Positions 2,312 to 31,700 of a stretch of 64,000 nt of DNA are shown piece by piece (position 1 is the stretch's first letter; the number at the start of each line of letters is the position of its first letter). The notes under the pieces were generated by a model, which saw only the letters and a program-made list of their open reading frames with translations, was not told the DNA's origin and searched no databases. Source of the DNA: Malacoraja senta. Lineage: Eukaryota. Location: assembly GCA_038087875.1 (NCBI GenBank), contig JAXLNO010005352.1:1-64000 (forward strand). Reading direction: 5' to 3'. Position numbers and translations under genes: made by a program.

Positions 2312-3924
2312 CAGTGGCTTGCAAAAGTTTTCATACCCCTTGAACTTTTCCACATTTTGTCACGTTACAACCACAAACGTAAATGTATTTTATTGGGATT
2401 TTATGTGATAGACCAACATAAAGTGGTGCATATTTGTGAAGTGGAAGGAAAATGATACATGTTTTTCAAATTTTTTTACAAATAAAAAACTGAAAAGTGT
2501 TGTGTGCAAAAGTATTCAGCCCCCCTGAGTCAATACTTTGTAGAACCATCTTTCGCTGCAATTACAGCTGCAAGTCTTTTGGGGTATGTCTCTGCCAGCT
2601 TTGCACATCTAGAGACTGAAATTTTTGCCCATTCTTCTTTGCAAAATAGCTCAAGCTCAGTCAGATTGGATGGAGAGCGTCTGTGAACAGCAATTTTCAA
2701 GTCTTGCCAGAGATTCTCAATTGGATTTAGGTCTGGACTTTGACTGGGCCATTCTAACACATGAATATGCTTTGATCTAAACCATTCCATTGTAGCTCTG
2801 GCTGTATGTTTAGGGTCGTTGTCCTGCTGGAAGGTGAACCTCCGCCCCAGTCTCAAGTCTTTTGCAGACTCTAACAGGTTTTCTTCCAAGATTGCCCTGT
2901 ATTTGGCTCCATCCATCTTCCCATCAACTCTGACCAGCTTTCCTGTCCTTGCTGAAGAAAAGCATTCCCACAGCATGATGCTGCCACCACCATGTTTCAC
3001 AGTGGGGATGGTGTGTTCAGGGTGATGTGCAGTGTTAGGTTTCCGCCACACATAGCGTTTTGCATTTAGGCCAAAAACTTCAATTTTGGTCTCATCTGAC
3101 CAGAGCACCTTCCTCCACATGTTTGCTGTGTCCCCCACATGGCTTGTGGCAAACTGCAAACGGGACGTCTTATGGCTTTTTTTCAACAATGGCTTTCTTC
3201 TTGCCACTCTTCCATAAAGGCCCGATTTGTGGAGTGCACGACTAATAGTTGTCCTGTGGACAGATTCTCCCACCTGAGCTGTGGATCTCTGCAGCTCCTC
3301 CAGAGTCACCATGGGCCTCTTGGCTGCTTCTCTGATCAATGCTCTCCTTGCCCGGCCTGTCAGTTTAGGTGGACGGCCATGTCTTGGTAGGTTTGCAGTT
3401 GTGCCATACTCTTTCCATTTTCGGATGATGGATTGAACAGTGCTCCGTGAGATGTTCAAAGCTTGGGATATTTGTTTATAACCTAACCTTGCTTTAAACT
3501 TCTCCACAACTTTATCCCTGACCTGTCTGGTGTGTTCCTTGGGCTTCATGATGCTGTTTGTTCACTAATGTTCTCTAACCTCTGAGGCCTTCACAGAACA
3601 GCTGTATTTATACTGAGATTAGATTACACACAAGTGGACTCTATTTACTAATTAGGTGACTTCTGAAGGCAATTGGTTGCACTGGATTTTATTTAGGGGT
3701 ATCAGAGTAAAGGGGGCTGAATACTTTTGCACGCGACACTTTTCAGTTTTTTATTTGTAAAAAAATTTGAAAACCATGTATCATTTTCCTTCCACTTCAC
3801 AATTATGCGCCACTTTGTGTTGGTCTATCTTATAAAATCCCAATAAAATACATTTACGTTTGTGGTTGTAACGTGACAAAATGTGGAAAAGTTCAAGGGG
3901 TATGAATACTTTTGCAAGCCACTG
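2312..3924 (-). mobile_element. Full-length Tc1/mariner DNA transposon (Passport-like, IR/DR type), 1613 bp
   Basis: About 213-bp terminal inverted repeats (2312-2525 and 3712-3924) starting CAGTGGCTTGCAAAAG, with inner direct repeats GCAAAAGTATTCA; TA target duplication on both sides. Confidence 0.97.
2530..3549 (-). CDS. Tc1-family DD34E transposase, 339 aa, open reading frame
   Basis: Paired-like HTH, GRPPK linker, WSDETK, QQDNDPKH and SPDLNPIE motifs; 34 residues between the second D and the E. Confidence 0.96.
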   Translation of the reverse strand: MKPKEHTRQVRDKVVEKFKARLGYKQISQALNISRSTVQSIIRKWKEYGTTANLPRHGRPPKLTGRARRALIREAAKRPMVTLEELQRSTAQVGESVHRTTISRALHKSGLYGRVARRKPLLKKSHKTSRLQFATSHVGDTANMWRKVLWSDETKIEVFGLNAKRYVWRKPNTAHHPEHTIPTVKHGGGSIMLWECFSSARTGKLVRVDGKMDGAKYRAILEENLLESAKDLRLGRRFTFQQDNDPKHTARATMEWFRSKHIHVLEWPSQSPDLNPIENLWQDLKIAVHRRSPSNLTELELFCKEEWAKISVSRCAKLAETYPKRLAAVIAAKDGSTKY

Positions 3925-6450: not shown

Positions 6451-7710
6451 TTTGTATAGGAAGGAACTGCAGATGCTGGTTTAAATCAAATATAGACACA
6501 AAATGCTGGAGTAACTCAGCGGGACATGCAGCATCTCTGGAGAGAAGGAATGGGTGACGTTTTGGGTCAAAACTCTTCTTCAGATGTCAGGGGAGAGGGA
6601 CTTACATAGATAAGGAAGTGTATAGATAAGGAAGGGTAAGGTGTGAAAACAGGACAAAGGGAATTCAGATCAGAAAATGTAGAATAAATCATTGTTAGTT
6701 GGGACAAAGTAACAACAAAGCAGAGATAAAATGTAGAGACAGTAAAGGGCCTGTTGCACTTGCATGCGATTGCATGCGTTTGGCGCGACCAAACGGAAGC
6801 GGAGTTCGCGGTAAGATCGCGCTAGACGTAATTTGCATCATACTTACCAATCAGCTGGGCAGGAGGCAGGCCGACTGAATTTGGACGTCGCACGGCGTCG
6901 GGCGGTGACGTCATCACGCAATGCCACGCGGTGACGTCATCGCTCAACATCACACGCTAGGCGTACGCCGTCAAGACGCTGCGTACAATGTCAAGACGCT
7001 GCGTACGCCCTCAATGCGCCTGCGGGCTGATAGGCCGTTGGCGCGCGAAATTTTCGGACAGTGCGGGATTTTCAGAGCCCCGCGCGATGTCGGGACCAGC
7101 CCCGCACAACTCCATACGCCTCCGCGGTTGGAAGTGGGACCGGCCCCGCGCGGCCCGTACGCCTCAAGCGACCGCATTTGGTCGCGCCAGACGCATGCAA
7201 TCGCATGCAAGTGGGACAGGCCCTTTAGATTGGTCAGAGAACTGGGAAGGAATGGAGAGAGAGGAAAAGCAAGGGTTACTTGAAGTTAGAGAGGTCAATG
7301 TTCATACCGCTGGGGTACAAGTTACTCAAGCGAAATATGAGGTGCTGTTCCTCCAATTTGCGCTGGGCCTCACTCTGACAATGGAGGAGGCCCAAAACAG
7401 AAAGATCAGTGTGGGAATGGGAGGGGGAGTTAAAGTGTTTAGCAGCCGGGAGATCAGGTAGGTTTAGGCAGACTGAGTGGAGGTGTTCAGCGAAACGATC
7501 GCCAAGCCTGTGCTTGGTCTCACCCATATACAGGAGTCCACACCTGGAACAGCAGATACAGTAGATGAGGTTGGAGGAGGTGCAAGTGAACCTCTGCCTC
7601 ACCTGAAAAGACTGTCGGGATCCTTGGACGGGGTGGAGGGGGGACGTGTAGGGACAGGTGTTGCATCTCCTGCGGATGCTGGGGAAAGTACCTGGGGCGC
7701 TGGTGGTGTT
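6451..7710 (-). mobile_element. 5'-truncated Penelope-like retroelement (GIY-YIG endonuclease end plus 3' terminal repeat)
   Basis: ORF 7276-7731 has CNTC...NLIYCICCSRCGLLYMGETKHRLGDRFAEH...HFNSPSH...LEEQHLIFRL...GMN, the GIY-YIG of Penelope-like elements. Flanked by 9-bp direct repeat GGTCAGTGG (6442-6450 and 7711-7719). Confidence 0.9.
6746..7224. mobile_element. CpG-rich MITE, PIF/Harbinger-like, nested in the Penelope-like element
   Basis: About 47-bp TIRs AGGGCCTGT(TG/CC)CACTTGCATGCGATTGCATGCGT.TGGCGCGACCAAA, flanked by TAA and TTA; no coding capacity. Confidence 0.85.
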
Positions 7711-10700
7711 GGTCAGTGGATTATTGTTCATCCACGATGTATCTTCGAACCACTTTTTTAAAATTGCGAGTCATTGTAAAGTCCCTCAAATGTTGTTGGA
7801 TAAATGGTTCCCTATTTCCACCTATTTCCAATGACTATTCAATCACACTTCTTATAGACAATGGAAAGTCTTTGTGGTCTCAGAACTCAATTCATTTAAT
7901 AATCCATCTCTCATCAGCTAATATGGCTACACTATTTCTGCACCCATCGCCTTTCTTAGTTAATAGCGACCCACTTGGATAGTGATGGTAATGCTGCTGA
8001 ATATAAATTCGTAGTCAGGCTCAACAGCAACAAACTGTTGGTTAAACTTAGGTGGTCGTGCAGCACCTGTGGATGGAAAGGAATGGTGGACATTTTGGGT
8101 CAAAACCGTGCAGCGGGGCACGGCCTGCCTTGCTGGAAGATGGTCAATACCAGAGACTTATGAGATACAAACATTCACACTTGAATGTTGCCTGATCTCA
8201 CTTCATAAACATGAGCTTCTTCATTCTCGGAGGAAATGCAAATGGAACTGCACACTACAATCAGCAATAAACTATTTCTGATCTGATGAAGGTGGGAAAG
8301 TATTTGATAAAGTAGTGGATAATAAAATAGTTTATCCCAGGAAATCACCTTCAGCACCTTCATAGCAGTGATGTATGTACTGGAGGGTTTGATTATTTGC
8401 CTCCAACAATCATCTTCCCAGATGTCGGATGTGTGACACCTGCTAGTGTTTCAGCAATTCAATTTTTAATTTAATTTTAAAGCCTTATAATAAATTTGCT
8501 TAAATTTTAAATAGTTCTCTGCTATAACCAAGTTCAGTCTCAAATATCCAAAATGCTTGAAGTCTGAAATAAACACATTGTAATAATGCTGCAAAATGTT
8601 CAAAAGGGCAGTCATCCATGTTAGGAGGAGTTAGCAATTCAGAGCAATGACCTGCCAGAGTTCTCACATATTTCTTCAGACGGGGCTAGGCTGCAACTTT
8701 CCGAAACACTGGCTCAGCTGCACTTGGAGTAATGTGCAGAGCTTTGGTCACTGTGCTTTACAAAAAGTTTGATTGCAAGGGAGAAAGTGCAGAGGAGATT
8801 CACCAGAAGCTCACCTGAAGTGGAGAATTTTAGTTATGGGGTAAGATTGGATTGGCTGGGTTTGTTTTCCCTGGAAGGAAGGGGCTGAGGGGTGACCAGA
8901 TAGAGGTACAGAAAATTATAAGAGGGATAGATAGGGTACATTGTCAGAATCAACAGAAATTGGTTCACCATATTTAAGTTTTATAACATATAGGTTGCAT
9001 CACATAAAATTAAACTTGCTACACCATTTGAAACTTTTATTTTCAAAATGTACGTGGTTGGGTTAAAGACAGAGGTGGACTTTAATGCCACCGAGGGGAG
9101 AAGGAAACCCACAGAATGTGCCTAATTCTGCTAGTTCTCCTATTTGAAGTGCACGACTTCGCAAAGGAGCAGAACTTGGTCACTTTTCCACAAGAGAAAA
9201 TCAAGTTCCTCTAGACAGGAGAAAATCAAGCTTTTTTTAGAAAGGAATCAAAGAGCAATTAAGTGGTCTTTTGGAACAGTGGTTCTCCATCCATTTCGAT
9301 AAAAGGTGTCAAAGGCCACTCATTTTAAGGAGCTGGGAGGTTTCCAGGGACCACTAGTATCCCGAAAGCTGGGGTAGCCAAGATGCTGAGTAAAAAACAA
9401 AGTGCTGGAGGAACTCAGCGGGTAGGGTATCATCTGTGGAGGAAAATGGACAGAAAATGTTTTGGGTCAGGATCCTTCTTCAGACTGCAAGTGTATCTTT
9501 TATTTCCTGTGTACTTACTAAGTAAACTTCCTTAACAGGGTAACATAGAGATGTGACAGGTAGTGCATCTGTCTCACAGCTCCTGTGACCAGGGTCTGAT
9601 TTTGACCTCTGGTGCTGTTTGTGTGGAGTTTGCATGTTCTCCCTGTGACGACAGGGTTCCCCACACGAATACTCTAGTTTTCTTCCAAACCCAGTGTTTG
9701 GATGTAACATTAATTGGCAACTGTAAAATAGCCCTATTATAGGTAACTCGTAAGATAGAATAAGTTACAAGGATCTAAGTGGGAGAGTGGGATTATTATG
9801 ATTGTTCTTAAAGCCTTAATAGACTTAGTGGACCAAAAGACTCCCTCTGGTGTAAGAATATATGCAAATATAAAACTATAAGAAATATCAACATTATCTG
9901 CCATAAGCTTTGGCACCAACTAAGGTGTCAAGAACTCAGCATGGGAGCCATTCAAGCAGCTAGACAAAACATCCTGACATAATACTAACTACTTAACAAC
10001 TCCCCTATTTTTGAAGTACACCGTGGCAACTCAGAGGTCACGTTGCTTTTTTTTAGAAATAAATGTTCATAAGCTCCCAGAAGTTAGAAATGACAGGAAT
10101 AAAACAGGGTGTCCATTAGGAAATAAGCAAGTGTATTTGAATCTGCAAAAAACAGACATTTGTATTTATTGCCAAGAACTTAGCCTGAAGAATTATATCG
10201 GTATAAAGCTGTGGTTTTAGCATAACATCAAACTAAACAATAGGACCAATAGAGGCAATGTTTTGTTATGCTCGGTGACCCAGAACAAAGGGAGAAAATA
10301 CATAAATCTGTATCCAGGTCAGCTCTGTGAGTGAAGCTTGGTATAGCTAACACATTCACCTCAATAACAGTGAATTTACAAACAAGTTTTTTTTTTGATT
10401 GCTTATAAATCGGTTTTTAAGCATTCATTATGCTTAGCTTCAGTTTTGGTCAATCATCTTAAAAAGTTGTCAATTCAAAGATCCAAATTAGTTGCAATAT
10501 AACTAAAATGTATTCAATGTGTACAGAATTACCATTAGTTTGAATGTCAAAGGCAAAGTATCTGTTATTAGAATAAAGCAATTGTCTTTTAAACTCAATA
10601 AACGGGTACGGTATTTAATAAATTAAGTTATGAATTGAAGTTAAAATTGTGAAATCTACCCCTACTCAAATATCTTCAATGCAGTTTTAACTTATTGACA

Positions 10701-16969: not shown

Positions 16970-19126
16970 TCTGCATTATAATAAGATAGACTGGTGCACA
17001 TTTTAATATGAAAAAAATCAAAAATTTTGAGAAAAAAACAAAACAGGTCAGGCAGCAGCTATGGAAGCAGAAACAGTCAATGTTTCAAGTCTGCGACCCT
17101 TCATCAGAAGTCTTGATATGCTGAACTGATCAAACGTCTGCCCAACTGCTTTAAAAAATGCCTCATCCTATATTCCCAGTTAAAATGCTAAAAATACTTG
17201 CCCAAAAATTAAGTTCGAAAATTTTCAAAGACACTTCACATTTCTACAAAGGAATGTTTACAAATATTGATTGTGAACAGCACACCGAGTCCTGTTGGAA
17301 TGAAGCCACATCCAAAGCAGCCATTTTCAAGGTTATAGAGAAAGGAAAAAACCCAGAGAAATACAGATGCTGGGTGCAAAAAGATAATAAGCTTTTCAGC
17401 ATTTGCAATTCTTTAATTTTCAGAGAATTGCCTGTCTGCTAAATCACAAATAGAGATCACCAACCATGTTTATGGTTGACATTAACAAACTTGGCTTAGT
17501 GGAAGGAATCAAGAGGTTGTGTGTCTGTCCATGTCTCTGACTGTCTAGCAGGGGGGAGGGGGGGTGGGAGAGAGAAACAGTGTGTTGCTATTCAGATTAA
17601 TGATCAGTGACCAATGATGTGCCTCAGGGATCAGTACTGGGTCCATAGTTGTTTTCATCCATATTAATGATTTGGATGACAACATTGTCGGCGGATGTCA
17701 AGTTTGTGAAAATTAGGGGTGCTGTGGACAGTGAAGGTGGCTGCCATCTCAGATTCCAATGGGATCTAGATGAACTGGGGGTGTGGGACATGAAACTGAT
17801 TAAATAGATATCCTAGTGAACATAGATGACCTGTAAATCTCAATAGCTGATTAACTATTTCTGTTGATCTCTTTACTTCCATTTAGTTTAATTATGTATT
17901 CATTTTCAATCAGACATTGGCAACGACACTAACTTACCAACTTACATATTTGTCTCCTCAGTTCAGAATTGGCCATACAATACTTGTCAAGTTTCCTTAA
18001 TGTGAATCCAGAATATCTCCAAGAAATTACTCATTTCAGTTGGTAATTTAGTGCCATTTCCAATGTTGGTTTCAATACCAGTAGTTAAACTAAACTGGTA
18101 AATAGATCAACAGATAAATAAGTAACCAGGGGAGGTGCAGATGTATTTTTCACATTATAATTATTGGAGGTATTGTGATGAGGTACTGTCACTGGGTAAG
18201 GGTTTCATCAGTCCAACTGATACAAGAATGCATCCCAGTTTCAGATATTAGGGCAGAGGCAGCATTTCGCCATAACGTAGAAAATATCTGAATTCCCAAG
18301 GTGATGTGAGACTGAGATTACAGAGAGCTGGTAAAAAAAAAATCATAACCAAGACTGGATGTCCTGCAGTGAGTGCATCATATTCCTTAATATTTCAATC
18401 ATTCACCAGATACAAGTCAGGAGTGCAAAATATTCTTGACTAACCTGTAATTGCAAATCTAACAACACTTAAGAGGTTCAATAGTTTCCTAATCGCTTCA
18501 GTGGCACCTCATGCAACATGTGTAATGTTTACAACCCCCATCCTCTGCCTATCATGACAGCAAGATGCATAAAATATAAGATGTCATCTATTATCCAGAC
18601 AAGAATAACAAATACATGGTTCAAAGCACCTGTCCTATCCATCCTCATCCTAAACCTGCCCTGTATCAGTATCATATACTGTCAATTCCTCATTATTACC
18701 CATCGGAATCTTTGAAGACACAACCTAACACCACAATGGGGTACCTTATTTACATTGATTACAGAGGTTCAAGAAAGTGACCCATTATCTGTCTCAACAG
18801 TAATTAAGTTTAGTCAGTTAAATGTTGGCCTGACTTCAATATCAACACCAACTCTATGAAGAACAAAATGGCCATCTTGGAAAGTCGGTGTGAAAATATT
18901 TTCCATTTCGACTTGCATGCACTAAAATAGCACATCTATTTAGTAAAGACCGAGATGATTAGACCATTATTGGTACACAAAGGAAATTCCTTTTTGTGCA
19001 ATAAAATTTTAATGGTTTTCTTCCTTTTATTTAAAAAAAAGTTCAGTTCTTTAAAGGTACGAATTGACACACACTTAAGTATTATTTATACAGTTAAAGA
19101 GATAAAACTGGAGAAAAATAGTTTAC

Positions 19127-19186
19127 TTCATGGTTAATTATGGTCCAACCACAAGAGGATTCACTATCGCTGGAATTCTCTGACAT
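19127..19186 (-). CDS. CCPG1: CCPG1 first coding exon (LIR motif); exon including 5' UTR spans 19127-19202
   Basis: ATG at 19186-19184; MSENSSDSESSCGWTIINHE is nearly identical to the human CCPG1 N-terminus MSENSSDSDSSCGWTVISHE. Acceptor tttgcag at 19203-19204, donor gtaaac. Confidence 0.96.
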
Positions 19187-19304
19187 CTTCAAGCCCAGGT
19201 AACTGCAAAACAAAGATATATTCAAGTTAATTTAAAAATCAATTGGGCATTGAATATTAGACTCGAGATGTCATGTTGCAGCAGTATAAACATTGGTTGT
19301 GCCG

Positions 19305-26800: not shown

Positions 26801-27225
26801 GCAACACTCATGATAACATACACTATCAATATGCTTGATTTCCTAATTTTGACAATATCCTGATCCAACAATAATCCAGCAACCCACAGCGCTATAGACG
26901 GCGAGTCCTCGCCTCCGCCTCCAATAACACCGGTTGACAAATGTGGCCGGTGTGGACAGGGTCGCACTGTGGAGAGGTGGGGTCAGGCTGTTGGGGAAAC
27001 ACCCTTGCCCCCGGGCTGAGAGGGTGGACAGGACAAGAGCGAAGGCTGGACATGAACTAAAGATGAGACAGGCCCTGCCCTGCCCTGCCCGGCCCGGCCC
27101 GGCTGCGATTCACATCCAGCAGCAGCGCCGGTTGATCGACCCCGGGACATCGCTGGACTGTCCTCCCCGATGGACAGCGACGCGTTTGCACGCGGGGCCC
27201 CGGACGCGGCCTTGTCTTGCCTTAC

Positions 27226-27400
27226 CTGCCTCCCCTCAGCCGGAGGTGCCTCACGCTGTGTACTGGTTAAAACCACCATCCACACCCGGCCCTTGTGATG
27301 TTTTGACTGACGACGAGCAGTGACGACGGCCGAGCGAAGCGTCAATACAAGCAGCACGAGGCCGCGCCGCATTGTGGGACTTGCAGTCCCGCGGCTCGAA
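27226..27400 (-). other. CCPG1: Probable non-coding first exon of CCPG1 (5' end uncertain)
   Basis: Strong minus-strand donor CAG/GTAAG at 27224-27225 inside the CpG island. The first coding exon has an upstream splice acceptor, so a 5' UTR exon is required. Confidence 0.6.
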
Positions 27401-27513
27401 GTCAGCGCCGGGGCCGCCGCGTCACCGGACTACGCCGCCCAGAATGCAGCGCGCGTCGCGCTGGCAGCGTCCGCCGCGGAACACGTCGCCTTCGAACAAC
27501 CCAATCAGGCGTG

Positions 27514-27527
27514 GTTACCATGGCAGC
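27514..27527 (+). promoter_or_regulatory. RFX X-box upstream of PIERCE2
   Basis: GTTACCATGGCAGC is one mismatch from the canonical GTTNCCATGGNAAC and sits about 150 bp upstream of the ATG of a motile-cilia gene. Confidence 0.7.
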
Positions 27528-27677
27528 GCTGCCACAACAAAGCAGGCGGGGAGCGAGTGGGACAGAGTGGGAGCTTAGAACGGAGCAAGTGGGGCAATTA
27601 GGGACAGAGGCGCCGGAGTGAGGAACCCTGTGGCCCATAGGGCGCCGGAGAAAGCCGTCGGGAAGACAAGAGTCACC

Positions 27678-28640
27678 ATGGCTGACTGTCCCGTCCCATC
27701 GCCTGCTCGAAGGGTCCAGTTCAAAGAACCAGAATGTGACGACTTCAAGCAGCCCTTCTTTGTTCCAAAGCAGGAATCTAATGAGCCGCCGAGGGATCTC
27801 AATTCGTCTCCCACTCGTAAGGTCCATCTTAAGGACAGCGAGTTCGACTGTCTCAACCAATTCATCGCTTCGAAGCCTGATTCTGGTGCTGTAACTTGCG
27901 ATGATCAAAACCCGCCGCCCATCACAAATAATGAATCTGAAGAGTGCGAAGCGAACAATCGGCCCTTTGCTCCAAAGGCGGACTTCGAAGACTCCGCGCA
28001 TGATGATCCCTGTGCCCCAAACACTGGAATGGATGGATTTAGAAATTCAGTCTGCGACGACCTCAGCACATCCTTCGCTCCAGCTGTTGTTGGTATTAAG
28101 GACTCCATCTGTGACAACTACTGTTTCACTCCAGGGGAGCCTTTGGGAGATCCGTTGCGTGATGATTTCAACCCTTCCACTTCTTTAATAGTTCCCTTGG
28201 ATTCAATATGTCACGACCTAAAATCAGGCCTTGAATGCAAAGACGCAAGTGGTGATCTCACGATATCCTATGCTCCACAAGTTGAGGACAAAAAGGAAAC
28301 GAGTTGCGACGATCCTATTCCCGTCCGCCCTCCAACGACAAAGGATAAGAAGCTGTGGTTTCCCTGTGCGAACCCTGGAAACCCTGTCTTTTCCTGCATG
28401 GAAAAGATCCCAACGTCGCCACAATCCCCGGCTCCATTCGTGAAACCCCAGAATCCGCTGTTCAGAACAACCTCTGCCGATTATGGATCCAATGAACCGA
28501 CTTGTGACATTGCACCCTCTGTCTACAAACCCCTATCGCAGTCGTTCTCGGCGGCGCTCCACACCGGTGGGATGTATCGTAACAGCTCCCTGAACACTAC
28601 GTCGGATAAGAAGAGAATTCACGATTTACTCGCGCTTTGA
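27678..28640 (+). CDS. PIERCE2: Piercer of microtubule wall 2 (C15orf65 orthologue, DUF4490 family); single coding exon, 320 aa with a long repetitive N-terminal extension
   Basis: C-terminal PCANPGNPVFSCM...FRTTSADYG...SQSFS...GMYRNSSLNT matches PIERCE/DUF4490 (human PCVNPGNPVFSCM...YKTNSSHYG...GFYQNNTLNT). First ATG is in optimal Kozak context (accATGg) at 27678. Head-to-head with CCPG1 and tail-to-tail with DNAAF4, as in mammals. Confidence 0.92.
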   Translation: MADCPVPSPARRVQFKEPECDDFKQPFFVPKQESNEPPRDLNSSPTRKVHLKDSEFDCLNQFIASKPDSGAVTCDDQNPPPITNNESEECEANNRPFAPKADFEDSAHDDPCAPNTGMDGFRNSVCDDLSTSFAPAVVGIKDSICDNYCFTPGEPLGDPLRDDFNPSTSLIVPLDSICHDLKSGLECKDASGDLTISYAPQVEDKKETSCDDPIPVRPPTTKDKKLWFPCANPGNPVFSCMEKIPTSPQSPAPFVKPQNPLFRTTSADYGSNEPTCDIAPSVYKPLSQSFSAALHTGGMYRNSSLNTTSDKKRIHDLLAL

Positions 28641-28764
28641 TTTTCTGCCCCCGAACAGTTCTGTATTACTATAGTAAGAAAGTGAAAACAAATGTTCCCT
28701 TTTTCTTTCAATGCCAGATTTTGGAAGAGAATGGTATACAACCAGATGGAATTTGAGACTCTTG

Positions 28765-28792
28765 GTGTGTGTGTGTGTGTGTGTGTGTGCGT
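28765..28792 (+). repeat. (GT)n microsatellite downstream of the PIERCE2 stop
   Basis: Direct reading. Confidence 0.9.
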
Positions 28793-31700
28793 GGAAAACA
28801 AAAACAATTTGATCGTTTGTATATTTAAAAATAATTTTCTGTGGTAATATGCCCGTCTATAATATAGGGGGGTTTTCAGACCTTTACCGTGACTTTTGTT
28901 TCCATTTGCATTCATTTAGCATTTTACATTTGCAGATAAAGGAATCGAATCATGGAAAAATTAAAACCCGAGGCTATTCATCGCGTCTTTTTCATCAGTC
29001 TAATCCTTCAGTATATCCTTTAGTCTCTTGCCTTGAGATCAGGTTCTTCTGGCACATGTCCAAGGACATTTAAATACGATAAAAGTTGCTATCCTTTCCG
29101 GTAGTGAGTTCCAGATCAGGGTCAAACTTTAATGGTAAAGTCTTTATCACTCTCCTCTTGTACCAATCAATACTTCCTGTTTTTGTTTTTGCCCTTGCCC
29201 TTCCACGTGTTCTGAGAGGGGCTGCAGTTGGACATCTTTCTTGCAGACAGTCGTCGGGGACATGGCTACAAATCTGGTCTCTTACATCTGACAGGAGCGG
29301 AGCTAACTGTGCTGACTGTCATTTATTGCTCTTCTGCCTTTTCCAGCCATTTGTTTAGTGTTTGATTTCTAATTCCATCTCTCATTCACACTGCAAAATT
29401 GCAACAAAAAAAACGTTATAACTTTATAGCAGTTCCCAATTCTCTTGGCGTGGATTCCAGTGATTTCAAAGTTAGACTTAAATTGCCATAGTGATTTTGA
29501 GTGAATCTAAATGATTTAGACAGCTGCACATTTGGCCAGGCATTCTCCAAAGATTTGAAACTTTTAATCCTGAAGAAGGGCCTTTGCAGTTGTATGCTGA
29601 ACCTTCTTTGAGGTAAAAACAAGTGAAAATGTCCAGTTTGGTTTAAGGAACATGGTGCCTCTGGCTTCAGATTAGTACCAATCGCGTGAGTGCAATGCAA
29701 CTCAACCTACCGAGAAATAAAGAACTTTGCCTTGCCAACAAAAGGAGCTTCATCACCGAGTCCAAGCACTGACTCTTTATAACTCTTGTATTCTTTTGTC
29801 TATGAGGTCACTCTCTAATTATTCTCATTCACTCATTGACCAGATAACCGTGTTTACAGTTTATCCCCATAGTCACTCCAGTTTTATGCTATCAGATATG
29901 TCTCCCTGCCCCCCCCCCCCCCCTCCCAACTTAACAAACTTATTTTGTCTCCTTACCAGTTCTGATGAAGTGTCTCTGACATGAAACATAGCTCTTGTTT
30001 CTTTTCCCACAGATGCAATCTAAGCTGCCAAGTGTTTACAGCATTTTATGGTTTAAGAACCGACTCTTTGATAAGGGCTCCAAGTTTTCTTTTGGAGCAA
30101 TGTGTTTTTTGTTGCCTTATATTTCTCAGTTTAAAAGGAGATTAACTAAAATATATCCTAAAATGCCTGCTGCAAAGGAAAGGTTGGCTCCCATTAACAT
30201 TGTCTGACAGGAGGTACTGAAAGTGCAATTCTTATAAACAGACATGTGCTACTGAAATAAACAATCGCCAAGCACCCTAACCTTTAGAGACAACATGTAT
30301 CGCGAGGTTATTAATCACTGATGATGATCAGAAAGAACATGGCATTACTTATATTTATGAATCATTACAGACAAACAATGATAATTTGAATAAAACCAAA
30401 AAGGGTTAATGGATTTAACCAGGGCATCTAGTTAACATCAGGTAAGCCGTTTAGCAACAAGTTGAAAAACACATTCTCACAGACTGAAATCTTTCTGGAC
30501 TTTCCAACTCTGAATCAGATCTATGCCAATATCAGGAGAGACCAAATGGTGGCGAAGAAGTAGTATACATCAGACAACGTCATAGAGCGGTCAGCGAGTA
30601 CTCAAAAATGCTTGAGTCAATGAAGTTTCATGCCATCAGATTAAACATGGGCAAGGAACCGTATTGTACATTACTGATTGCCTCTCCTTTCCCTAGTTGG
30701 TTTATCAGTACGACACACTAATTGCCACTTTTAAAGAGTTAGTGGGGATAGGACATGTGCATAACTTAACAAGTGTAACTCGGCATCACCATTATTAACT
30801 TTGATGGCCACATTCTGAAAGACATATGGCATATTGGTCTTGTAGGAGGTGGTGAGAAAATCCACACAAGGGGAAAAATCCTAGTGATCTAACAAAACTA
30901 AACTTCATGCATTCACTTTCAAGCAGCCTGCATGATCATCTGTTGTATCCATTCCCACCACCAACAGCACACCAAGTCTGCAATGTTCACCATTTTTAGG
31001 ATATACTTGCAGCAACTAGGGTGGCGCAGGCTCGGTAGAGCTGCTGCCTTACAGCACAAATAAATGAATTAGAAAGAGGTCAATGGGGCCTTGAGCAATT
31101 GAATACCTGAAAGGATTGTGATATGATTTAGAGCCAGGGATGAAGGAATGGCAATATAATTCCAGGTGAGTTTGATGTGCTGTTTTGGAGGAAAACCTGC
31201 AGCTGACGAAGACAAGAGACTGCAAGTGCTGGAATCTTGGCAATAACATTTTTGAACCTGCAGGTGATGGTGTTCTCACATATTCATTGACCTTGTCTTT
31301 ATGGGTGACAAAAGTCACGTTTTGGGAAGTGTTAGAGCAGCCCAAGCAAACATAATTTTAAATCTTTCCAAATATTTACACTTTTTGTTCTTTTGCCTTC
31401 TCTAAATAGCAAATCTATGAATGGGTTCTCAAAACACACACCTATGTATAGAGAGGACACTGGGGAAATAAATATGCTTGCTGTCCTTCAAAACTTTCCC
31501 CACAATACTGCTCCATCATAATTGCAAGCATTCATATTTGTCTCATCTTGATGGGTCCAAGCTAACTTGTTTTCTTTTCAATTTCCTTCTTTATAACGTT
31601 AACTTTTAACCAGTTACAACACACTGGTACTCTACACAAGTTTCTGTTTTTATGCAGGTAGCCTGCACATGAGCTTCGGAGGCCAGTGACAATACTTCCT

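What the first reader, a model, noticed from the sequence alone, without database searches (positions are those of the whole stretch)
27678..28361. PIERCE2 with a ~228-aa N-terminal array of about 12 degenerate acidic Cys-Asp-Asp repeats
Seen: the PIERCE/DUF4490 core begins only at aa 229 (28362). It is preceded by a stop-free in-frame extension from a strong Kozak ATG. The extension parses into 15-20-aa units with a consensus near K-x-x-F-K-D-S-x-C-D-D-[LF]-N-x-x-F-A-P: RRVQFKEPECDDFKQPFFVP / KQESNEPPRDLNSSPT / RKVHLKDSEFDCLNQFIAS / KPDSGAVTCDDQNPPPIT / NNESEECEANNRPFAP / KADFEDSAHDDPCAPNTG / MDGFRNSVCDDLSTSFAP / AVVGIKDSICDNYCFTP / GEPLGDPLRDDFNPSTS / LIVPLDSICHDLKSG / LECKDASGDLTISYAP / QVEDKKETSCDDPIPVRPP. 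Known: mammalian PIERCE2 is about 120 aa, a microtubule inner protein that threads through the doublet wall and links to the outer dynein arm docking complex. Inference: the units are strongly diverged from each other yet the frame stays open, so the array looks old and selected. It could be a lineage-specific periodic spacer, a metal/Ca-binding tail or a tubulin-tail-like acidic arm on an axonemal protein.
Basis: partly seen in the sequence, partly recalled or inferred. Interest (0 to 1): 0.8.

Follow-up and report, generated by a model that had tools for sequence, protein, structure and literature searches.

The report
Skate PIERCE2 with repeat-built N-terminal extension
Sharks, rays and skates make a version of the small ciliary protein PIERCE2 that carries about 200 extra, probably unfolded, residues built from a decayed 18-residue repeat; the extra piece is real, old and transcribed, but its function is unknown.

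Summary
Window 27678-28640 (+) is one uninterrupted 320-codon ORF behind a CpG-island promoter that it shares head-to-head with CCPG1. Residues about 229-320 are a PIERCE2 core (Pfam PF14892; closest solved chains are PIERCE2, not PIERCE1).

Residues 1-228 are a degenerate tandem array of an 18-residue unit, K-V-x-x-K-D-S-V-C-D-D-[LF]-N-x-S-F-A-P. A unit model trained only on sharks scores 54 bits on the skate array, against a best of 6.7 bits in 300 shuffles. Eight units are recognised statistically and 12 by position.

The extension is open and alignable in all 14 full-length elasmobranch orthologues compared (15 with the longer Logan-contig ORF P0001). Five sharks compared have 7-9 clean units. 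The coding sequence is a single exon wherever that could be checked. A related skate's RNA contigs cover the 5'UTR, extension, core and 3'UTR without any splice.

No relative of the extension turned up outside elasmobranch PIERCE2. It is acidic (pI 4.4) and AlphaFold gives it no fold. Constraint among skates is weak (pN/pS 0.5-0.7), with islands conserved across all elasmobranchs.

Published structures put PIERCE N-termini in the A-tubule lumen on CFAP53. The likeliest reading is therefore a lineage-specific luminal tail that orders only on binding. I class it as a new variant of a known kind, of moderate interest.

The parts
26850..28640 (.). CpG island covering the shared CCPG1/PIERCE2 promoter and the whole PIERCE2 coding exon
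   Evidence: GC is 0.61-0.66 at 26850-27750. CpG observed/expected is 0.88-1.09 over 26850-28640, against 0.21-0.32 in the flanks.
27501..27541 (+). Conserved promoter/5' block: CCAAT box (27501-27505) and X-box-like GTTACCATGGCAGC (27514-27527), followed by GCTGCCACAACAAA
   Evidence: Together with the first coding bases and the last unit plus core, this is the only DNA here that still aligns between the skate window and whale shark; no other non-coding DNA around the gene does. Three-species alignment. The X-box consensus matches with 1 mismatch, 0.06 expected by chance in the window. The function is inferred, not tested.
27433..28976 (+). Approximate mRNA extent (5'UTR, CDS, 3'UTR), unspliced
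   Evidence: Runs X2, X3 and X4 of a related skate each hold one 1.5-1.6 kb contig lying on 27433/27500 to 28972/29061. Depth is 18-35 in runs of only 100-150 million letters, with no joints and no coverage of the flanks. X4 also holds a spliced CCPG1 contig, so it is RNA. ATTAAA at 28960 fits the 3' ends.
27678..28640 (+). Single-exon PIERCE2 coding sequence, 320 aa plus stop
   Evidence: The orthologous coding sequence is one uninterrupted block in Rhinoraja, Heterodontus, Rhincodon, Mobula and Hypanus.
27678..27707 (+). N-terminal tip, aa 1-10
   Evidence: M1 and A10 are invariant and P7 is kept in 9 of the 10 sequences of alignments A1, A2 and A4. This is the stretch with the highest AlphaFold confidence, though still low.
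27708..27767 (+). Unit 1 (aa 11-30), the best conserved head; contains R-R-V-Q-F and C-D-D
   Evidence: HMM hit of 18 bits. R11, Q14 and F15 are invariant; V13 is kept in 9 of the 10 sequences of A1/A2/A4. Still aligns at DNA level with whale shark.
27768..27815 (+). Unit 2 (aa 31-46), decayed
   Evidence: Assigned by position only: orthologous to shark unit 2 in alignment A1. No HMM hit.
27816..27872 (+). Unit 3 (aa 47-65)
   Evidence: HMM hit of 15.1 bits.
27873..27926 (+). Unit 4 (aa 66-83)
   Evidence: HMM hit of 9.8 bits.
27927..27974 (+). Unit 5 (aa 84-99), present in batoids and absent in sharks
   Evidence: Assigned by position. It is a gap in all sharks in A1.
27975..28028 (+). Unit 6 (aa 100-117), an insertion of about one unit seen only in skates
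   Evidence: In A1 the skate residues after K100 (aa 101-118, 18 aa, one unit length) face a gap in all sharks and rays. No HMM hit.
28029..28082 (+). Unit 7 (aa 118-135), the best unit in the window
   Evidence: HMM hit of 20.4 bits. S124 and C126 are invariant across elasmobranchs.
28083..28133 (+). Unit 8 (aa 136-152)
   Evidence: HMM hit of 14.6 bits. D142 is invariant; C145 and D146 are nearly so.
28134..28184 (+). Unit 9 (aa 153-169), with Arg in place of Cys (L-R-D-D-F-N-P-S)
   Evidence: HMM hit of 12.8 bits. R161, D162, N165 and P166 are invariant.
28185..28229 (+). Unit 10 (aa 170-184)
   Evidence: HMM hit of 6.9 bits. C178 is invariant.
28230..28277 (+). Unit 11 (aa 185-200)
   Evidence: Assigned by position. 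C187 and A199 are invariant.
28278..28334 (+). Unit 12 (aa 201-219), with the conserved P-I-P tail
   Evidence: HMM hit of 10.5 bits. E207 is invariant; E203, K205, P213, I214 and P215 are nearly so.
28335..28361 (+). Basic linker (aa 220-228) joining the array to the core
   Evidence: Alignment A1. Phmmer alignments to human and bovine PIERCE2 start here, at aa 218-228.
28362..28637 (+). PIERCE2 core (aa 229-320): P-C-A-N-P-G-N-P-V-F-S-C-M through H-D-L-L
   Evidence: Pfam PF14892, 50.3 bits. 7ung_G PIERCE2 E 2.4e-15, against about 1e-6 for PIERCE1. 74-96% identical among elasmobranchs.
28641..28976 (+). 3'UTR with a (GT)14 microsatellite (28765-28793) and ATTAAA (28960-28965)

Best explanation
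SHOWN. This is the skate orthologue of PIERCE2 (C15orf65/Ccpg1os), a microtubule inner protein of motile cilia. In elasmobranchs its single coding exon begins about 200 codons further upstream than in other vertebrates. The added part was built by tandem amplification of an 18-codon unit before sharks and batoids split. It has since decayed, and it has gained or lost whole units: 7-9 scored in sharks, 12 by position in this skate. It is transcribed as one unspliced mRNA with the core and starts at a conserved Met in a strong Kozak context. No conserved internal Met could start a short form. It is acidic (net charge about -20), rich in Pro, Asp, Ser and Cys, and is predicted to have no fold of its own.

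INFERRED. In solved doublets the PIERCE N-terminus lies inside the A-tubule on CFAP53, and only the C-terminal part crosses the wall to the outer-dynein-arm docking complex. The extension should therefore sit in the A-tubule lumen. I take it to be an extra luminal chain that becomes ordered only on binding, as the core itself does. On this reading the conserved N-tip/unit 1 and the six C-proximal units (the V-x-F patch, the D-S-x-C-D-D turn and the F-A-P cap) are short contact motifs on CFAP53, other MIPs or the tubulin inner surface. The variable units 2-6 would be a length-tolerant connector. The net effect would be extra luminal cross-bracing of the doublet beneath the dynein docking site.
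For: Identity and orthology:
- Pfam and PDB matches.
- CCPG1 lies head-to-head in the window. Its exon 1 is spliced from 27226 to 19202, and the CCPG1 start and N-terminus were read at 19186(-).
- The same arrangement is seen in Rhinoraja, Rhincodon and Chiloscyllium.

Repeat:
- Statistics.
- Clean head-to-tail 18-residue units in sharks.

Age and retention:
- 14 full-length elasmobranch orthologues from 4 shark orders, 2 ray genera and 4 named or unnamed skates are all open and alignable over the extension, with Cys, Asp, Arg and Pro positions invariant.
- Flanking non-coding DNA no longer aligns between skate and whale shark.

Transcription: unspliced contigs with consistent ends.

Restriction to elasmobranchs:
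- An exhaustive profile search of 1.84 billion representatives found only these proteins, plus three spurious archaeal repeat proteins.
- A short PIERCE2 (P0010) and the mammalian chains have only 14-27 residues before the core.

Disorder: AlphaFold pLDDT 38.7 and 39.5, with no secondary structure.

Topology and precedent: PMC8595878 states that Pierce N-termini bind CFAP53 and that algal FAP182 carries a large N-terminal luminal domain. Mouse PIERCE1 (167 aa) and Tetrahymena CFAP182A (173 aa) also vary at the N-terminus.
Against: - No protein-level evidence and no structure for any elasmobranch axoneme.
- Short-term constraint is weak (pN/pS 0.50-0.72, Fisher p 0.02-0.16).
- The middle of the array is poorly conserved (majority fraction 0.35, occupancy 0.67).
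- The unit resembles no known MIP repeat or any solved chain and no Pfam family.
- Gnomon models in Chiloscyllium include isoforms that keep the extension but drop the core. That would not fit a purely luminal role.
- Tissue of expression is unknown because run identities are coded.
- A run of organism A (X1, RNA by its spliced CCPG1 contig, which matches the window exactly) laid no PIERCE2 contig, although it holds 0.19 of the sampled CDS words.
Confidence: 0.5

Rival explanations
1. Tolerated filler. The array arose by replication slippage in a promoter-proximal exon. It persists as a disordered tail without specific partners. It stays open only because a stop or frameshift would destroy the essential core downstream, since no internal start is available.
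For: pN/pS is 0.5-0.7 among skates, and 0.97 for aa 28-118 in one pair. Unit number varies and whole-unit indels occur. No fold is predicted. No conserved internal Met exists, so frame maintenance is enforced by the core.
Against: Specific residues are invariant over the whole of Elasmobranchii: A10, R11, Q14, F15, S124, C126, D142, R161, D162, N165, P166, C178, C187, A199, E207. Meanwhile flanking DNA has become unalignable. A neutral tail should have shrunk by in-frame deletion in at least some of the 14 lineages, but the shortest is still 180 residues.
Confidence: 0.3
2. Metal-binding or redox array. The regularly spaced Cys-Asp-Asp triplets, with neighbouring Ser and Asp, chelate Zn or Ca, or form disulfides that stiffen the flagellum.
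For: Cys is the most conserved repeat position, present in 24 of 32 shark units and 12 times in the window's extension. Acidic composition, pI 4.4.
Against: No match to any known metal site, Pfam family or solved chain. One Cys per unit with Asp partners is not a recognised site. Several orthologous units have Arg, His or Gly at the Cys position, and that replacement is itself conserved (R161 invariant). AlphaFold sees no compact structure.
Confidence: 0.1
3. Regulatory scaffold. The R/K-V-x-F heads of units 1 and 3 dock protein phosphatase 1, or another enzyme, before or after assembly. This is the idea in the scan's note s1-191482.
For: R-[RKNT]-V-Q-F fits [RK]-x(0,1)-[VI]-{P}-[FW] in 9 of the 10 sequences of alignment A4 and is the best conserved spot of the extension. 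Sharks have a second K-V-H-F in unit 3.
Against: The lumen of the A-tubule is not a place where PP1 is known to act (topology from PMC8595878). Scyliorhinus canicula has K-F-Q-F. Unit 3 is K-V-H-L in this skate and lacks the basic residue in rays. The motif is short and is simply the head of the generic repeat unit.
Confidence: 0.05
4. Not translated. The extension is a long 5'UTR that happens to be open, and the real protein is a short PIERCE2.
For: Other vertebrates' PIERCE2 is 109-122 aa. The window has two upstream ATGs in the putative 5'UTR.
Against: The frame is open in all 14 orthologues, with in-frame indels only. M1 is invariant in a strong Kozak context, and no conserved Met lies near the core. 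An open frame of 228 codons has a chance probability of about 2e-5 per species, an estimate from stop-codon frequency. The uATG at 27520 is specific to this species.
Confidence: 0.03

Closest known systems
Mammalian and zebrafish PIERCE2 (C15orf65, Ccpg1os), e.g. chains 7ung_G, 7rro_G, 8i7r_N
   Same: The core is homologous (about 40% identity over aa 228-316, including the P-C-x-N-P-G-N-P-V-F-S-C-M stretch). Genomic position next to CCPG1 on the opposite strand is the same. The presumed role is a wall-piercing MIP linking CFAP53 to the outer-dynein-arm docking complex (PMC8595878).
   Different: Those proteins are 120-122 aa, with about 25 residues before the core. This one has 228, made of 12 repeat units. 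It also lacks the last ~8 residues by which the mammalian chains and P0010 run on beyond the aligned D-L-L.
Chlamydomonas FAP182 and Tetrahymena CFAP182A
   Same: A PIERCE-like C-terminal wall-spanning part preceded by a larger N-terminal part that sits in the lumen (PMC8595878). CFAP182A is 173 aa with the core at its C-terminus.
   Different: The addition in FAP182 is a folded nucleotidyltransferase-like domain. Here it is an unfolded, acidic short-repeat array with no detectable homology to it.
Short tandem microtubule-binding repeats of other MIPs (Mn, PYG, GFG repeats; SNYG module) described in PMC10973386
   Same: The concept is shared: short repeated linear motifs in proteins that are disordered alone and bind the luminal tubulin surface periodically. 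The PIERCE core itself carries the SNYG module.
   Different: The consensus sequences are unrelated. The unit here is acidic and contains Cys. Neither a profile search of solved chains nor a Pfam scan found any link. Binding is not shown.
PIERCE1 (C9orf116)
   Same: Same Pfam family. Mouse PIERCE1 (167 aa) also has a longer N-terminus.
   Different: The match is weaker (E about 1e-6 against 2e-15 for PIERCE2). PIERCE1 sits at a different locus and has no repeats.

Membership tests
PIERCE1/2 family (Pfam PF14892, PIRC1_2) | Match to the family profile above Pfam's gathering score | tested here: met
   50.3 bits against a cut-off of 27, E 2.8e-13, aa 242-311 on profile positions 29-102 of 103.
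PIERCE2 orthologue (as opposed to PIERCE1) | Closer in sequence to experimentally identified PIERCE2 than to PIERCE1 | tested here: met
   Human, bovine, pig and mouse PIERCE2 chains give E 2.4e-15 to 2.6e-12. PIERCE1 chains give 1e-8 to 4e-4.
PIERCE2 orthologue | Conserved position head-to-head with CCPG1 (the mouse gene name is Ccpg1os) | tested here: met
   A spliced CCPG1 contig joins 27226 to 19202 on the minus strand. The CCPG1 start and N-terminal peptide were read at 19186(-). CCPG1_N/CCPG1_C genes are called upstream on the opposite strand in Rhinoraja, Rhincodon and Chiloscyllium.
PIERCE2 orthologue | Small size (about 110-125 aa) with a short N-terminus that contacts CFAP53 | tested here: not met
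   320 aa, with 228 residues before the core. This is the departure that makes it a variant. Contact with CFAP53 is not testable here.
SNYG-module MIPs (PMC10973386) | [ST]-N-x-x-[ILVY]-G motif followed by a short helix | tested here: inconclusive
   The aligned stretch reads T-T-S-A-D-Y-G, where human has T-N-S-S-H-Y-G. The Y-G is kept (Y269, G270 invariant), but the strict pattern as printed in the paper is not matched letter for letter.
Microtubule inner protein that pierces the A-tubule wall | Physical location in the doublet: N-terminus luminal, C-terminal part outside on CCDC114/151 | not testable with these tools
   Known only for mammals (PMC8595878). It is inferred here from 74-96% conservation of the core among elasmobranchs and its homology to the solved chains.
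PP1-docking proteins (RVxF) | [RK]-x(0,1)-[VI]-{P}-[FW] in an accessible disordered region, conserved, plus demonstrated PP1 binding | tested here: inconclusive
   The pattern is present and conserved in 9 of the 10 sequences of alignment A4. Accessibility is doubtful given the luminal topology. Binding is not testable here.

The most novel reading that the evidence does not exclude
The 18-residue K-V-x-x-K-D-S-V-C-D-D-L-N-x-S-F-A-P unit is a new class of luminal binding repeat. It would turn elasmobranch PIERCE2 into a long filamentous MIP running along CFAP53 and the protofilaments under the dynein docking site. This would be a lineage-specific reinforcement of doublets, analogous to the extra sperm MIPs of mammals and possibly tied to internal fertilisation and long sperm storage. 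Isoforms that carry the array without the core (seen in Chiloscyllium models) could then act as free luminal or cytoplasmic partners.
Probability: 0.2. Interest if true: 0.65.

Novelty: new variant of a known kind. Interest (0 to 1): 0.4.

Why it matters
PIERCE1 and PIERCE2 are the only known proteins that thread through the microtubule wall and couple the 48-nm luminal pattern to the 24-nm dynein docking pattern. Their loss causes laterality defects.

An ancient vertebrate lineage has more than doubled the size of PIERCE2 with a repeat array and kept it in every shark, ray and skate orthologue compared. That shows the luminal end of this linker is evolvable. It also offers a natural experiment on what can be placed in the A-tubule lumen.

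If the units prove to be binding motifs, they would add a new module to the catalogue of MIP-microtubule recognition elements. If they are filler, the case is a clean example of a repeat-born disordered tail held open only by the essential domain downstream.

For annotation, the case shows that the 'uncharacterized protein LOC...' entries of sharks and rays are PIERCE2.

Tried and rejected
- Tandem Repeats Finder on the DNA found nothing in the extension. Direct-repeat search found only three weak 16-19 nt remnants, at spacings 156, 162 and 207. The repeat is visible only at protein level.
- BLASTP of the extension against itself returned only the identity hit, so I wrote my own masked Smith-Waterman.
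- The profile search hit three archaeal 2,400-2,600 aa 'beta strand repeat' proteins (E 1e-9 to 2e-5). hhalign gives 2% probability, so this is a match of periodicity only. Rejected as homology.
- A Pfam scan of the extension alone and of the Heterodontus extension gave nothing.
- The ESM Atlas feature search gave no usable hit.
- A unit profile and an N-tip profile against solved chains gave only chance hits (affibody, a restriction enzyme). The N-tip is therefore not recognisably the mammalian CFAP53-binding N-terminus.
- Searching with the 92-aa core alone found a single short relative, P0010. Mammalian PIERCE2 was not returned although it shares a 10-residue word. That tool's silence about short PIERCE2 in chimaeras or bony fish therefore carries no weight.
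- A direct Pfam test of minus-strand ORFs for CCPG1 domains found none, only a Tc1/mariner remnant. CCPG1 was instead identified by the spliced contig, its N-terminal peptide and the Rhinoraja annotation.
- dN/dS on the core among skates is uninformative because there are only 2-3 synonymous changes.
- DNA of five orthologous loci could not be fetched because the files are too large. Deeper codon analysis was therefore impossible.
Full report
WHAT IS THERE.

Window 27678-28640 on the + strand is a single open frame of 320 codons. The ATG lies in gtcaccATGg. An in-frame stop lies upstream at 27576, so the frame cannot start earlier. The region from about 26850 to the end of the coding sequence is a CpG island: GC is up to 0.66 and CpG observed/expected is 0.88-1.09, against 0.21-0.32 in the flanks.

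Pfam places PF14892 (Piercer of microtubule wall 1/2) at aa 242-311, with 50.3 bits against a cut-off of 27. A phmmer search of all solved chains gives PIERCE2 of human, pig, cattle and mouse as best hits (E 2.4e-15 to 2.6e-12, aligned from aa 218/228 to 316). PIERCE1 scores far behind, at 1e-8 to 4e-4. Those PIERCE2 chains are 120-122 aa, with about 25 residues before the conserved P-C-x-N-P-G-N-P-V-F-S-C-M. The window protein has 228.

THE REPEAT IS REAL.

- The extension's best gapped self-alignment outside the main diagonal scores 82, against 38 +/- 7 in shuffles (z about 6).
- The best ungapped offsets are 18, 36, 52, 70, 88 and 105.
- Successive masked self-alignments put units in register along the whole array.
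- I seeded an HMM with one shark 18-mer and iterated it on five shark orthologues only. It converged on 38 units lying head to tail, 7-9 per protein, with the consensus K-V-x-x-K-D-S-V-C-D-D-[LF]-N-x-S-F-A-P.
- That shark-only model, which never saw a skate sequence, finds 5 units and 54 bits in the window's extension. In 300 shuffles it finds at most 1 unit and 6.7 bits.
- A model iterated on all species finds 8 units and 108 bits, against a shuffle maximum of 9.2.
- At DNA level only faint remnants survive.

IT IS OLD, AND IT IS FOUND THROUGHOUT THE ELASMOBRANCHS SAMPLED.

Full-length relatives with the extension exist in these species:
- Sharks: Carcharodon, Heterodontus (named pierce2), two Scyliorhinus, Rhincodon, two Chiloscyllium, Hemiscyllium.
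- Rays: Mobula, Hypanus.
- Skates: Rhinoraja, Amblyraja (named C15orf65 homolog), Leucoraja.
- Several Logan contigs.

All align over the whole extension. Indels are in frame, several spanning about one or two unit lengths, the clearest an 18-residue, one-unit insertion in skates. Invariant positions include M1, A10, R11, Q14, F15, S124, C126, D142, R161, D162, N165, P166, C178, C187, A199 and E207.

Conservation is uneven:

| Region | Majority fraction | Occupancy |
|---|---|---|
| aa 1-27 | 0.61 | 0.96 |
| aa 28-118 | 0.35 | 0.67 |
| aa 119-183 | 0.61 | 0.97 |
| aa 184-228 | 0.67 | 0.99 |
| core | 0.86 | 1.0 |

Between the skate window and whale shark, blastn still aligns only a 49-nt promoter block, the codons of aa 7-20, and the stretch from aa 198 to the end. 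All other non-coding DNA around the gene has diverged beyond recognition.

An exhaustive HMMER search of 1.84 billion representative proteins with the extension profile found only elasmobranch PIERCE2 clusters and three archaeal repeat giants. hhalign dismisses the archaeal hits at 2% probability. A short PIERCE2 from another organism (P0010, 109 aa) has 14 residues before the core. Its ATG sits directly behind a splice acceptor, with no open frame upstream. I could not examine chimaeras or bony fishes directly, and the word-indexed search is demonstrably insensitive for short PIERCE2. 'Elasmobranch-specific' is therefore likely but not proven.

GENE STRUCTURE, NEIGHBOURS AND EXPRESSION.

The orthologous coding range equals three times (length + 1) in Rhinoraja, Heterodontus, Rhincodon, Mobula and Hypanus, which means a single coding exon.

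CCPG1 lies upstream on the opposite strand in Rhinoraja, Rhincodon and Chiloscyllium. In the window, contigs of two runs end at 27226 and continue with letters that match 19173-19202 exactly. This is a CCPG1 exon 1 to exon 2 junction. Exon 2 opens with the CCPG1 start and its Trp-containing N-terminal peptide. This is the arrangement that gave mouse Pierce2 its old name, Ccpg1os (PMC8595878).

Three runs of a related skate (about 93% identical) each hold one contig of 1.5-1.6 kb:
- Each contig lies on 27433/27500 to 28972/29061.
- Depth is 18-35 in runs of only 100-150 million letters.
- There are no joints and nothing on the flanks.
- The only indel listed inside the coding sequence is a 3-nt deletion.

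Such depth cannot come from genomic DNA at that run size, and one of the runs also carries the spliced CCPG1 contig. The 3' ends fit ATTAAA at 28960. The extension is therefore transcribed in one piece with the core. Tissue is unknown.

SELECTION.

Among three skates pN/pS of the extension is 0.50-0.72 (Fisher p 0.02-0.16). It is 0.39-0.97 for aa 28-118 and 0.60-0.73 for aa 119-228. This is weak purifying selection at best. The core has too few changes to judge.

The case for function therefore rests on three long-term facts. Every lineage keeps 180-230 open codons. Specific residues are invariant. No lineage has trimmed the tail.

A caveat applies. No conserved internal Met exists, so any frameshift in the tail would also kill the core. 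An open frame alone therefore does not prove that the tail itself is useful.

PROPERTIES AND LIKELY MECHANISM.

The extension has pI 4.4 and a net charge of about -20. It is 12% Pro, 13% Asp and 5% Cys. The core is basic, with pI 8.7. AlphaFold2 with 10- and 14-sequence alignments gives pLDDT 38.7 and 39.5 and no secondary structure, for the extension and the core alike. The core is known to be ordered only on the lattice, so this says 'no autonomous fold', not 'no structure when bound'.

Gui et al. (PMC8595878) state three relevant points:
- Pierce1 and Pierce2 bind CFAP53 through their N-termini.
- They protrude through the wall to reach CCDC114/151 with conserved C-terminal regions.
- Algal FAP182 carries a large N-terminal domain that mammals lack.

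The skate extension should therefore lie in the A-tubule lumen. N-terminal enlargement is also the family's usual mode of variation (mouse PIERCE1 167 aa, Tetrahymena CFAP182A 173 aa).

My best reading is a luminal chain that orders on binding. Its conserved ends (the tip with unit 1, and units 7-12) would make contacts, and its variable middle would be a connector. I put about 0.9 on the shown part and about 0.5 on the whole statement including this mechanism. The main rival (0.3) is tolerated filler. Metal or redox chemistry of the Cys-Asp-Asp triplets (0.1) and PP1 docking by the R-V-x-F-like heads (0.05) are possible but unsupported. An untranslated leader is very unlikely (0.03).

COMPARISON AND NOVELTY.

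It is a PIERCE2 orthologue by profile, best hit and synteny. It fails only the size criterion. The repeat matches no Pfam family, no solved chain and none of the published MIP repeat classes (PMC10973386). Databases already hold the predicted proteins, mostly as 'uncharacterized'. No paper in the held library mentions PIERCE2 together with sharks, skates or such an extension. I class it as a new variant of a known kind, with interest 0.4.

Noticed in passing
window 27501-27541: A CCAAT box and an X-box-like (RFX-type) palindrome, GTTACCATGGCAGC, about 150 nt upstream of the PIERCE2 ATG. It is conserved between skates and whale shark while the surrounding non-coding DNA is not. This fits regulation as a motile-cilia gene from a bidirectional CpG-island promoter shared with CCPG1.
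   Followed up: partly
window 27520-27522: An upstream ATG that opens a 33-codon out-of-frame uORF lies inside the X-box-like motif. It is specific to this species, since Rhinoraja and whale shark read AAG there. A second uATG at 27444 is in frame but is stopped at 27576.
   Followed up: partly
window 19097-19231 (-) and 27226-27284 (-): CCPG1. The non-coding exon 1 ends at 27226 and is spliced over about 8 kb to exon 2 at 19202. Exon 2 holds the start codon (19186, minus strand) and an N-terminal peptide with the G-W-T-I-I motif, which from memory resembles the LC3-interacting region of human CCPG1.
   Followed up: partly
P0016 and P0017 (Chiloscyllium plagiosum isoform X2, C. punctatum): Predicted isoforms of 158 and 209 aa keep the repeat extension. 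They then splice from inside the coding exon to a short alternative end and lose the PIERCE core. If real, the array can be made without the wall-piercing part.
   Followed up: partly
window 28362-28637 compared with 27678-28361: Among skates the synonymous divergence of the core (pS 0.03-0.05) is three to five times lower than that of the extension (pS 0.12-0.18). The counts are small (2-3 changes), so this may be noise. It could also reflect a constraint at the nucleotide level.
   Followed up: no
P0011, P0012, P0013 (archaeal, 2444-2618 aa): Giant Thermoplasmata 'beta strand repeat-containing' proteins have a repeat of similar period (K-V-N-F-V-D-S-L-L-N-N-T-N-I-S-I...). They are picked up by the extension profile at E down to 1e-9. 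hhalign rejects them, so this is coincidence of period and a few residues.
   Followed up: yes
window 2533-3561 (-): A stop-free 343-aa Tc1/mariner (Sleeping-Beauty-like) transposase remnant with HTH_Tnp_Tc3_2, HTH_SB and DDE_3 domains.
   Followed up: no
window 7279-7770 (-): A 164-aa open segment with a weak, sub-threshold GIY-YIG match (E 7e-4, 20.3 bits against a cut-off of 22.6). It may be a Penelope-like retroelement fragment.
   Followed up: no
window 28765-28793: A (GT)14 microsatellite in the PIERCE2 3'UTR. Contigs of relatives are cut or gapped there.
   Followed up: no
L003 1600-1640: In the unidentified organism that encodes the short PIERCE2 (P0010), the ATG follows a polypyrimidine tract and CAG acceptor directly. 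A 5'UTR intron therefore precedes the coding exon there, whereas the elasmobranch mRNA is unspliced. In the skate the conserved P-I-P-V-R-P-P codons just before the core are pyrimidine-rich and followed by AAAG. This may or may not be a relic of such an acceptor.
   Followed up: no
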